The notes beneath the pieces were generated by a model, which saw nothing but the letters and a program-made list of their open reading frames with translations, was not told the origin of the DNA and searched no databases. Positions 38,206-39,143 of a DNA stretch of 64,000 bases are shown piece by piece (position 1 is the first letter of the stretch; every line of letters starts with the position of its first letter). Origin of the DNA: Setoptus koraiensis (Eukaryota; Animalia; Arthropoda); contig CM106585.1 of assembly GCA_048013815.1 (NCBI GenBank), positions 6,510,001 to 6,574,000 on the forward strand. Direction: 5' to 3'. Both the position numbers and the translations under genes were made by a program.

Positions 38206-38495
38206 GGGATCAAATGTGATTTGAATCACCCGCGCGCGAATTGGCGACTGCGATGACTTCGTCTTCTCACCGTAAACTCCATTCTCAATTTTGATCTACA
38301 CCCGACGAGGGGGCATATCGACAATTATTATAACGTGACACAATAGTCAGAATCAAATTCGATGGTCATTTTAAAACCTTTTATACTTTTTCAATCAACG
38401 TGATAGATAAAAAAGTGATCATGAGCTCGCCTGGTAAACCTCAAGCCTCCGATGGACACATCAGCTGGAAGAAGAAAGGAAGAGTGAAGAAAGTT
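38206..38495 (+). repeat. Duplicate of the ABCF1 promoter, 5'UTR and first ~25 codons (56294-~56620)
   Basis: gggatcaaatgtgatttgaatcacccgcgcgcgaa is identical in both. gatggtcatttt...aatcaacgtga.agata.aaaagtgatcATGAG is shared. [23 protein letters not shown] aligns with [22 protein letters not shown]. Confidence 0.92.
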
Positions 38496-39143
38496 CAAAG
38501 CTCCGATGAATCGGATGATGATTTACCATCTGAACGAGTGGCAAAGAAGCCAAAAATGACCAGAGGTTTAACTGTCAAGACAGATAGTACCAGATCAGAC
38601 AAATCAGCTATTGATGATCAGGACAGCGACTCAAGCCCGAGCCGAAGCCCAAGTCCGGATCAAACTGCACAGTCTAGTAAAACTGCCAAACAATCGGACT
38701 CCAAATCTACAGTATTTCTCCAGAAAAAATTGGACAATATAAGGTCCACCATTAGGGTAGATCACCAACCTAATATATGCAAAGACTATAAAGAAACAGG
38801 ATTCTGTGGTTTCGGTGACTCGTGCATTTATCTTCATGATAGAACGGACTATAAACTAGGTTGGCAGATTGAACTAGAAGTGGCCAAAGGTACATATTGC
38901 GATGAACATGACGATAAATATAAAATAGACTCGGATGAAGAAGAGAGTCTACCCTTCAAATGTTTCATTTGCCGCGAGGCATTCCAGGAACCTGTCGAAA
39001 CTCAGTGCAAGCATTACTTCTGTCAAGAATGTGCATTGAACCATTATAGAAAATCTACCAAATGTTTTGTTTGTGCAAAACCCACGTCGGGCATATTTTT
39101 GCCAGCCAAAAAATTGATAGAGAGACTAAATTTAGAAGAATAA
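38421..39143 (+). CDS. RNF113A: RNF113A/Cwc24 (CCCH plus RING) with an ABCF1-derived N-terminus, 240 aa
   Basis: [33 protein letters not shown]; [29 protein letters not shown]...CFVC. Confidence 0.94.

What the first reader, a model, noticed from the sequence alone, without database searches (positions are those of the whole stretch)
38206..39143. RNF113A has taken over a duplicated ABCF1 promoter and N-terminus (chimeric gene)
About 215 bp of upstream sequence, the start-codon context and about 25 codons are homologous to ABCF1 (56294-56620). The body is spliceosomal Cwc24/RNF113A, and an ABCF1 NBD2 remnant follows the stop. RNF113A therefore replaced the middle of an ABCF1 duplicate. The conserved Cwc24 pre-CCCH motif (RWDYQPD) is altered to RVDHQPN. 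An essential gene appears relocated by landing in a neighbour's duplicate.
Basis: partly seen in the sequence, partly recalled or inferred. Interest (0 to 1): 0.8.

Follow-up and report, generated by a model that had tools for sequence, protein, structure and literature searches.

The report
RNF113A with borrowed ABCF1 front end
In this tiny plant-feeding (eriophyoid) mite, the splicing-factor gene RNF113A starts with a copy of the upstream region and first 26 codons of ABCF1, a gene 18 kb away; the gene was remodelled where it stood, next to its old neighbour, and not moved.

Summary
Window 38206-38498 (215 bp upstream plus 26 codons) is a diverged copy of ABCF1's upstream region and start (56294-56619; E 7e-50). 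It is fused in frame to a CCCH+RING RNF113A/Cwc24 body (ORF 38421-39143). An ABCF1 NBD2 remnant (39162-39320) follows the stop.

- An 80-bp remnant of RNF113A's own CCCH finger (39317-39400) lies after the NBD2 piece.
- Two further collinear copies from the ABCF1 locus lie upstream: an acylglycerol-kinase-like pseudo-fragment and a 64-bp intergenic piece.
- Synteny is conserved.

A related mite has a canonical RNF113A (own N-terminus, RWDYQPN) directly upstream of the same claudin gene. Its ABCF1 carries the homologous upstream region. ABCF1 is therefore the donor, the event post-dates the species split, and RNF113A was not relocated.

Contigs from two independent studies span every junction with no differences. 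The body is under strong purifying selection (dN/dS 0.04). RNA-like contigs cover part of the body but not the chimeric 5' end. Use of the captured promoter and start codon is therefore inferred.

Whether this is the only RNF113A copy could not be checked.

This is a chimeric gene made by partial duplication, a known kind. The scan's notes list three similar 5' captures elsewhere in this genome.

The parts
37743..38041 (-). Pseudo-fragment of the acylglycerol-kinase-like (DAGK_cat) gene that lies upstream of ABCF1. It is a copy of the start of that gene's exon 2 (source 53923-54187) and contains an in-frame stop and a frame break.
   Evidence: blastn gives 77% identity, E 2e-50. tblastn with the exon 2 protein shows a stop and a frame change. 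Exon 1 of the source gene matches Pfam DAGK_cat at E 4.6e-26.
38052..38115 (+). Copy of a 64-bp piece of the intergenic region between the AGK-like gene and ABCF1 (source 55028-55091).
   Evidence: blastn gives 83% identity, E 2e-12, with 17% divergence.
38206..38420 (+). ABCF1-derived upstream region, the presumed promoter and 5' UTR (source 56294-56544). It begins with a 36-nt block (38206-38241) identical to 56294-56329 that holds a 7-bp inverted repeat (ATCAAAT GTG ATTTGAT) and a CG-rich run.
   Evidence: See A1. Identity to the window's ABCF1 upstream region is 83-84%, and the region is also homologous to the relative's ABCF1 upstream region. The exact 36-nt block is located.
38421..38498 (+). 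The first 26 codons, derived from ABCF1 ([26 protein letters not shown] versus ABCF1 [24 protein letters not shown]). They replace the canonical RNF113A N-terminus and its F-K-K-R basic motif.
38499..39143 (+). RNF113A/Cwc24 body. It comprises an acidic/Ser-rich linker, the altered pre-finger motif RVDHQPN (V113 at 38757-38759, H115 at 38763-38765), the CCCH finger (about 38775-38840), the RING (about 38958-39089) and the stop at 39141-39143.
   Evidence: Pfam hits. PDB alignment to RNF113A and Cwc24. 85.7% DNA identity to L001 591-1074. dN/dS 0.041.
39142..39147 (+). AATAAA hexamer overlapping the stop codons at the RNF113A/ABCF1-remnant junction. It is a candidate polyadenylation signal.
   Evidence: Its function is inferred only.
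39162..39320 (+). Non-coding remnant of ABCF1 NBD2 (source 57848-58033). The core 39162-39263 is 86% identical; the tail carries deletions.
   Evidence: The remnant is absent from the relative's RNF113A-claudin spacer.
39317..39400 (+). Truncated remnant of RNF113A's own CCCH-coding stretch (a copy of 38772-38854). It has a 6-nt deletion and a stop, and it abuts the ancestral 3' flank.
   Evidence: Divergence is 7.6% over 66 nt.
39403..39445 (+). Ancestral 3' flank of RNF113A, homologous to L001 1120-1163. It leads into the last exon of the minus-strand claudin gene, which starts at 39454.
56294..58386 (+). Donor locus: the intact single-exon ABCF1 gene (ATG at 56545, 613 aa, two ABC_tran domains) with its upstream region.
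   Evidence: The relative's orthologue is 97% identical (P0121).

Best explanation
This is the mite's RNF113A/Cwc24 gene, the spliceosomal protein that covers the 5' splice site before catalytic activation. It still sits at its ancestral position next to a claudin gene, but its front end has been remodelled.

After the split from the nearest available relative, sequence from the acylglycerol-kinase/ABCF1 locus about 18 kb downstream was copied into the RNF113A locus. The gene now begins with 215 bp of ABCF1 upstream sequence, ABCF1's start-codon context and ABCF1's first 26 codons. These are joined in frame to RNF113A at the acidic/Ser-rich stretch. The original upstream region and the N-terminal F-K-N-R basic peptide are gone.

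Shown here:
- the homology;
- the donor direction;
- the post-split timing;
- the conserved synteny;
- the correctness of the assembly;
- strong purifying selection on the body.

Inferred:
- Transcription now starts from the copied ABCF1 promoter.
- Translation starts at the copied ATG (38421).
- The already lysine/arginine-rich ABCF1 peptide, since changed to [10 protein letters not shown], stands in for the lost basic N-terminal motif.

The most likely route is stepwise. A duplicate of the AGK-ABCF1 segment landed beside or in the 5' end of RNF113A. A local copy of the RNF113A body then came to lie behind the duplicate's ABCF1 start. Finally the redundant parts (most of the duplicate and the old RNF113A copy) were deleted down to the small remnants now seen.
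For: Homology and anatomy:
-.

Donor direction:
- The SRKEK+K..KHEAE N-terminus is shared by ABCF1 of many eriophyoids.
- The relative's ABCF1 upstream region aligns with both window copies, while the relative's RNF113A upstream region and N-terminus do not.

Timing:
- Among informative upstream sites, the RNF-side copy agrees with the window's ABCF1 at 45 and with the relative's ABCF1 at 10.

Synteny:
- L001 has RNF113A, a 128-bp spacer, then the claudin gene.
- L001 1203-4508 and 4951-6297 match window 39454-42874 and 43381-44643.
- The roughly 250-bp NBD2+CCCH patch is missing from the relative's spacer.

Assembly:
- A 3169-bp contig from study P2 covers 38212-41344 with no differences.
- Four contigs from study P3 tile 38038-39504 with no differences.

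Function:
- The ORF is intact.
- Body dN/dS is 0.041 at dS about 1.07.
- The CCCH and RING ligands are intact.
- An RNA-like contig covers 38616-38835. It comes from a study in which another run holds a spliced claudin contig.

Stepwise origin:
- The ABCF1-locus pieces lie in collinear order around the body.
- The CCCH remnant abuts the ancestral 3' flank.
- The CCCH remnant is less diverged (7.6%) than the AGK piece (20%), nominal p 0.0175.

Tolerance:
- Yeast Cwc24 lacking residues 1-127 shows no growth defect (PMC6821175).
Against: - No RNA contig covers 38206-38615, so use of the captured promoter and ATG is unproven. Translation could instead start at the internal Met46.
- The open frame across 26 captured codons is only weak evidence.
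- Whether another RNF113A copy exists elsewhere in the genome could not be checked. The exact protein is not on record, and the scan's notes mention none.
- Only one relative was available. The timing and the ancestral state therefore rest on a single comparison.
- The divergence contrast that favours a stepwise origin rests on 66 nt and is uncorrected for multiple tests. Gene conversion between the two CCCH copies, 550 bp apart, would give the same contrast.
- The window lineage changed six positions that are conserved in the outgroups, against three in the relative.
Confidence: 0.7

Rival explanations
1. The anatomy arose in one step, in place. A single replication-based template-switching repair event (MMBIR/FoSTeS-like) hopped between the ABCF1 locus and the RNF113A locus. 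It laid down AGK', intergenic', the ABCF1 5' end, the RNF113A body, ABCF1 NBD2, the RNF113A CCCH piece and the 3' flank in one pass. The functional outcome is the same as in the best explanation.
For: - Six or more short templated pieces from two nearby loci in the same orientation lie in forward order.
- Short shared letters sit at the junctions: AGC at about 38499, and CC(G/T)AAT(G/A)T..TGCA at about 39320 (read).
- No terminal inverted repeats or transposon signature are present.
- Most block divergences are statistically compatible with one age.
Against: - The CCCH remnant is nominally younger than the AGK piece (7.6% against 20%, p 0.0175).
- After 15-20% divergence the junction microhomologies cannot be read reliably.
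- A one-step replacement of the 5' end of an essential gene would have had to be viable at once.
Confidence: 0.3
2. RNF113A moved to a new chromosomal place by inserting into the middle of a pre-existing ABCF1 duplicate.
For: ABCF1-derived pieces flank the RNF113A body in collinear order.
Against: The relative's canonical RNF113A has the same downstream neighbours (claudin and the next gene) at the same spacing and orientation. The ancestral 3' flank is still present at 39403-39445.
Confidence: 0.04
3. The chimeric copy is a decaying or silent duplicate, and an intact canonical RNF113A elsewhere in the genome does the work. This would explain the altered invariant W and Y.
For: - W113V and Y115H sit at positions that are invariant in the 120 best homologues.
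- Six window-specific changes fall at conserved sites, against three in the relative.
- Copy number could not be tested.
Against: - Body dN/dS is 0.041. Relaxation since the event would push this to roughly 0.25 or more (the estimate is my own arithmetic).
- The ORF is intact and all zinc ligands are kept.
- The locus is the orthologous one.
- An RNA-like contig covers the motif with no differences.
- Yeast Cwc24 works with M and F at these positions.
Confidence: 0.06
4. The apparent chimera is an assembly artefact: a mis-join at the 36-nt repeat shared with the ABCF1 upstream region.
For: Logan contigs break at 38205-38241, where the exact 36-nt repeat lies.
Against: - Beyond the 36-nt block the two copies are only about 84% identical, so this is a diverged paralogue and not a collapsed repeat.
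- A contig from study P3 (38038-38761) runs through the block and the coding junction.
- A contig from study P2 covers 38212-41344. Both show no differences.
Confidence: 0.02

Closest known systems
Human RNF113A / yeast Cwc24 / Drosophila mdlc (spliceosomal B-act factor)
   Same: - It has a CCCH finger followed by a C3HC4 RING with the same spacing.
- It aligns to human RNF113A residues 187-318 at E 3.6e-56 and to Cwc24 at E 4e-39.
- Phe213 (human numbering), which stacks on G1 of the 5' splice site, is kept, and Phe219 is an aromatic Tyr (alignment; residue roles from PMC5835773).
   Different: - The protein is short (240 aa) and lacks the GPxDMGATA...YRG middle region. The eriophyoid relative lacks it too.
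- Lys218 is Ile, as in other acariform mites.
- The pre-finger motif is RVDH instead of the otherwise invariant RWDY.
- The N-terminal F-K-K-R basic motif is replaced by an ABCF1-derived peptide.
Chimeric genes formed by partial duplication, with recruitment of another gene's 5' end (for example Drosophila jingwei and Sdic, and the chimeric duplicates catalogued in D. melanogaster; from my own knowledge, not checked here)
   Same: A DNA-level duplicate of one gene's promoter and first codons is fused in frame to the body of another gene. The donor stays intact. The captured codons evolve fast (29% divergence against 17% for the adjacent promoter).
   Different: No separate parental RNF113A is seen at the locus. 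The conserved, presumably essential gene itself now carries the borrowed front, and only an 80-bp remnant is left of a possible old copy.
Other 5'-end captures noted in this same genome by the scan (COQ2 from MRPS23 in this window; AsnRS from CCT4; a zinc transporter from a DBT fragment)
   Same: A housekeeping gene starts with a diverged copy of a nearby gene's upstream region and first codons. The COQ2/MRPS23 duplication is visible in my self-blast, where 49044-49233 matches 50614-50414 (inverted, 76%).
   Different: In this case the copy is direct, not inverted. It spans 18 kb, is accompanied by several other collinear fragments of the donor locus, and leaves a patch behind the stop codon. 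The other cases were not re-examined here.
Complex templated rearrangements by replicative template switching (MMBIR/FoSTeS; from my own knowledge)
   Same: Several short templated segments from nearby loci are joined with little or no homology.
   Different: The event is old (14-20% diverged), so the junction signatures are blurred. One remnant looks younger than the rest. A stepwise origin is at least as likely.

Membership tests
RNF113A/Cwc24 family | A C-x8-C-x5-C-x3-H zinc finger immediately followed (after about 40 residues) by a C3HC4 RING | tested here: met
   Pfam zf-CCCH at residues 119-140 (E 2e-6) and RING at residues 180-223 (E 1.8e-7). The protein aligns to RNF113A chain 5z56_M at E 3.6e-56 and to Cwc24 chain 5gm6_a at E 4.2e-39.
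RNF113A/Cwc24 family | Finger residues that contact G1 of the 5' splice site (human Phe213, Lys218, Phe219; PMC5835773) | tested here: inconclusive
   The Phe213 equivalent is kept. The Phe219 equivalent is Tyr. The Lys218 equivalent is Ile, a change shared with the relative and with Halotydeus, Brevipalpus and Leptotrombidium, which have Ile or Val. This is therefore a trait of these mites and not of this gene alone.
RNF113A/Cwc24 family | The R-W-D-Y-x-P motif in front of the finger | tested here: not met
   The window has RVDHQPN, whereas 120 of the 120 best homologues have RWDY. Yeast Cwc24 has LMDF, so the positions tolerate other hydrophobic or aromatic residues in a working orthologue.
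RNF113A/Cwc24 family | An N-terminal basic motif F-K-[KR]-[RS]...R-K-R | tested here: not met
   The motif is present in 70 of 98 full-length homologues, and the relative has it as IFKNRSR..RAR. The window has the ABCF1-derived [11 protein letters not shown] instead.
RNF113A/Cwc24 family | Orthology by position | tested here: met
   The downstream neighbours are the same as for the relative's RNF113A.
Chimeric gene by partial duplication (5' capture) | Two identifiable parental sequences joined in frame, with the donor intact elsewhere | tested here: met
   ABCF1's 5' end (56294-56619) and the RNF113A body are joined in codon 27. ABCF1 itself is intact, at 613 aa.
Chimeric gene by partial duplication (5' capture) | The chimeric 5' end is transcribed and the captured start codon is used | not testable with these tools
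   Only assembled contigs were available. RNA-like contigs cover 38616-38835 and run from 39103 onward, but not the 5' junction.
Chimeric gene by partial duplication (5' capture) | Selection keeps the chimera | tested here: met
   Body dN/dS is 0.041. The captured codons give about 0.3 on only 23 codons, which is uninformative.
ABCF (ABC-F ATPase) family | Two ABC_tran nucleotide-binding domains | tested here: not met
   The chimeric ORF has no ABC domain. Only 26 N-terminal codons and a non-coding 160-bp NBD2 remnant derive from ABCF1.

The most novel reading that the evidence does not exclude
The replacement of a gene's promoter and first codons by a patch copied from a nearby gene may be a recurrent, genome-wide mode of 5'-end turnover in this streamlined eriophyoid genome. 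There are at least four noted cases, two of them within this 64-kb window. It would be driven by error-prone templated repair in a genome with tiny intergenic regions.

In this case the captured ABCF1 peptide may then have been reshaped by selection. [11 protein letters not shown] became [11 protein letters not shown], which mimics the lost aromatic-plus-basic F-K-K-R motif of RNF113A.
Probability: 0.25. Interest if true: 0.7.

Novelty: new member of a known kind. Interest (0 to 1): 0.45.

Why it matters
- A deeply conserved spliceosomal gene can lose its own promoter and N-terminus and run on a neighbour's. The decayed by-products of the event are still readable, and an unremodelled orthologue in a sister species is available for comparison.
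- The scan has noted other cases in the same genome. Together they point to a possibly systematic way in which very compact genomes renew gene starts.
- The case offers a natural experiment on how dispensable the RNF113A/Cwc24 N-terminus and the RWDY motif are in an animal that has lost most of its introns. The intron-loss context comes from PMC7738191, which describes another eriophyoid.

Tried and rejected
- **Reverse direction (ABCF1 borrowed from RNF113A).** Rejected. The N-terminus is conserved across eriophyoid ABCF1 proteins. The relative's ABCF1 upstream region is homologous, while its RNF113A upstream region is not.
- **Retrocopy or RT template switching.** Rejected. The copied material includes non-transcribed upstream and intergenic sequence and a fragment of the neighbouring opposite-strand gene.
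- **Transposon-mediated fragment capture.** No terminal inverted repeats or other repeat signature were found around 36800-39800.
- **Search for the lost ancestral RNF113A upstream region.** L001 1-352 was compared with window 35500-38420 and scored no better than shuffles. This is uninformative, given the divergence of non-coding sequence.
- **Search for closer relatives or other carriers of the chimeric N-terminal half.** Only P0001 was found.
- **Look-up of the exact protein in public assemblies.** It is not on record.
- **Scan notes for another RNF113A copy.** None is mentioned. This is weak evidence.
- **Test for constraint on the captured promoter.** I compared its divergence with the pseudo-fragments. 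It did not differ from the AGK or NBD2 pieces (p 0.4-0.5), so no claim of promoter constraint is made. An earlier three-way count suggesting 21% remnant-specific change was inflated by non-homologous flanks and was dropped.

Full report
**What is there**

The plus-strand ORF 38421-39143 encodes 240 residues. It has a C-x8-C-x5-C-x3-H zinc finger (residues 119-140) and a C3HC4 RING (residues 180-223). It aligns to human RNF113A residues 187-318 (E 3.6e-56) and to yeast Cwc24 (E 4.2e-39) among solved spliceosome structures. Its best database relatives are annotated RNF113A/mdlc.

ABCF1 lies 18 kb downstream. It is an intact single-exon gene (56545-58386, 613 aa, two ABC_tran domains).

A blastn of the region against the whole window gives these matches:

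| Copy at the RNF113A locus | Source | Identity | E-value |
|---|---|---|---|
| 38206-38488 | 56294-56609 | 73% | 7e-50 |
| 39162-39263 | 57848-57949 | 86% | 3e-29 |
| 39323-39388 | 38772-38843 (RNF113A's own CCCH stretch) | 85% | 2.6e-17 |
| 37780-38041 | 53923-54181 | 77% | 2e-50 |
| 38052-38115 | 55028-55091 | 83% | 2e-12 |

The pairwise alignment shows 215 bp of shared upstream sequence and an identical start context (AAAAGTGATCATGAG). The shared first codons read [26 protein letters not shown] against ABCF1's [24 protein letters not shown]. The switch to RNF113A-type sequence (SSDESDDD...) falls in codon 27, about 38499-38501.

The piece 53923-54181 lies in exon 2 of a minus-strand DAGK_cat (acylglycerol-kinase-like) gene that sits head-to-head with ABCF1. 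Its copy at 37743-38041 has a stop and a frame break.

The locus therefore reads, from left to right:
- AGK' fragment
- intergenic' piece
- ABCF1 upstream region plus 26 codons
- RNF113A body and stop
- ABCF1 NBD2 remnant (39162-39320)
- RNF113A CCCH remnant (39317-39400)
- old 3' flank

**A relative gives direction, timing and place**

The best hit of the protein, P0001, is 240 aa and 78% identical. It comes from a Logan assembly of another run. Its N-terminus is the usual one for the family (MSESKLPIFKNRSRPSNSRARAHE, then SSSDDSADD...), and its pre-finger motif is the usual RWDYQPN.

Its contig L001 carries the gene 128 bp upstream of the same minus-strand claudin gene. L001 1203-4508 and 4951-6297 match window 39454-42874 and 43381-44643. 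RNF113A has therefore not moved.

The relative's spacer lacks the roughly 250-bp NBD2+CCCH patch. Its 3' flank (L001 1120-1163) matches window 39403-39445, right after the CCCH remnant.

The relative's ABCF1 (P0121, 97% identical, contig L002) has an upstream region that aligns with both window copies. The relative's RNF113A upstream region aligns with neither.

The ABCF1-type N-terminus (..SRKEK+K..KHEAE..) is shared by ABCF1 of many eriophyoids, including Aceria tosichella. ABCF1 is therefore the donor.

At informative upstream sites the RNF-side copy agrees with the window's ABCF1 45 times and with the relative's ABCF1 10 times. The copy was made after the two species split, very roughly midway since then.

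**Is the assembly real, and is the gene alive?**

Contigs from two studies other than the probable source sample reproduce the assembly with no differences. One 3169-bp contig covers 38212-41344. Four contigs tile 38038-39504. Contigs break only at 38205-38241, which is a 36-nt block identical to 56294-56329. Beyond that block the paralogues are only about 84% identical, so a repeat collapse is excluded.

Two runs of a further study behave like RNA. They cover exons only, and one contig holds the claudin intron spliced out (39674/39774, CT..AC). One of these runs has a contig over 38616-38835, inside the RNF113A body and across the altered motif, with no differences. Another contig runs from 39103 through both remnants into the claudin gene. 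Nothing RNA-like covers the chimeric 5' end. Contigs cannot show transcript starts.

Against the relative, the body (from SSKTAKQ to the end) has dN/dS 0.041 at dS about 1.07. The low-complexity N-terminal part gives 0.41. If the window's copy had been free of constraint since the event, I estimate the body's ratio would be about 0.25 or higher. The gene has therefore been kept by selection.

Polarised with eight outgroups, the window lineage changed six conserved positions: W113V, Y115H, and four in and around the RING. The relative changed three, all conservative.

**The altered motif**

All 120 best homologues have R-W-D-Y in front of the finger. The window has RVDH. Yeast Cwc24 has LMDF at the same positions. 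The change is unusual among animals but lies within what a working orthologue tolerates.

**The lost N-terminus**

In 70 of 98 full-length homologues, the first 60 residues hold an F-K-[KR]-[RS] motif followed by R-K-R. The relative keeps a version of it. The window has lost it.

The ABCF1-derived stretch has changed at 7 of 12 residues that are identical in the two species' ABCF1 proteins. [11 protein letters not shown] became [11 protein letters not shown], which gives an aromatic residue followed by lysines. This may be a re-creation of the lost motif, but it cannot be tested statistically here.

In yeast, Cwc24 lacking residues 1-127 shows no growth defect, although it works less well in vitro and no longer binds the Brr2 C-terminus (PMC6821175). 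This makes a swap of 26 residues plausible without lethality.

**How it arose**

Copy-versus-source divergence by block:

| Block | Divergence |
|---|---|
| AGK' | 20% |
| intergenic' | 17% |
| promoter | 17% |
| captured codons | 29% |
| NBD2 core | 14% |
| CCCH remnant | 7.6% |

Most values fit one age. There are two nominal exceptions. The captured codons are more diverged than the promoter (p 0.029). The CCCH remnant is less diverged than the AGK piece (p 0.0175, on 66 nt).

Three features fit a stepwise route: the ABCF1-locus pieces lie in collinear order around the body, the CCCH remnant abuts the old 3' flank, and that remnant looks younger. In this route:
1. A duplicate of the AGK-ABCF1 segment arrives at the RNF113A locus.
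2. A local copy of the RNF113A body comes to lie behind the duplicate's ABCF1 start.
3. Deletions remove the rest.

A single template-switching repair event is the main alternative. Short shared letters at the junctions are compatible with it, but they are blurred by age. No transposon signature was found.

**Verdict**

The chimera is real, old enough to be fixed, and kept by selection. The donor and the order of events are clear. Relocation is refuted. Use of the borrowed promoter and start codon is likely but unproven, and single-copy status is untested.

This kind of event (a chimeric gene by partial duplication) is well known. The unusual points are these:
- A conserved spliceosomal gene was remodelled in place, with no surviving parental copy at the locus.
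- The scan's notes list three similar cases in this genome. I saw only the duplication behind one of them myself: 49044-49233 matches 50614-50414, inverted.

Noticed in passing
window 55721-56271 (self-complementary over 55741-56242): An array of 41-42-bp units rich in GGGAGAGGG/CCCTCTCCC sits between the AGK-like gene and ABCF1 and is its own reverse complement over about 500 bp. It ends exactly where the promoter homology starts (56294) and has no counterpart in the RNF113A-side copy. The RNF-side copy keeps about 15 nt (38191-38205) that match the relative's ABCF1 upstream region but not the window's own, so the array probably expanded or inserted after the duplication.
   Followed up: partly
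window 49044-49233 vs 50614-50414: An inverted duplicate (76% over 201 nt) corresponds to the COQ2/MRPS23 5' capture noted earlier by the scan. It is the only other sizeable intra-window duplication apart from the ABCF1-to-RNF113A set.
   Followed up: no
window 39103-39924: An RNA-like contig runs from inside the RNF113A 3' end (39103) through both remnants into the spliced claudin gene on the other strand. Either the claudin 3' UTR overlaps the end of RNF113A, or convergent transcripts were merged by the assembler. Either way the remnants lie in transcribed sequence.
   Followed up: partly
window 38362-38402 and 56447-56530: A short upstream ORF starting at ATGGTCATTTTA is present in both window copies of the ABCF1 leader but not in the relative (ATTGCC). 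In ABCF1 it runs through a TTAGAACTT x3 micro-repeat that the RNF-side copy lacks.
   Followed up: no
window 31464-31637: A near-identical (97%) tandem duplication with a 66-nt offset.
   Followed up: no
L001 1070-1075: The relative's RNF113A ends ...GAA GAA TGA TAG. The stored protein P0001 ends in an extra W, so the public gene call read TGA as Trp (a gene-calling code artefact). The look-up therefore reported 'translates to query: no'.
   Followed up: partly
window 38421-39143 and L001 353-1072: Both eriophyoid RNF113A proteins are only 239-240 aa. They lack the conserved middle region (GPxDMGATA ... YRG ... GPVRAP) found in other mites, spiders and insects. This is a lineage-wide shortening that may go with the massive intron loss described for eriophyoids.
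   Followed up: partly
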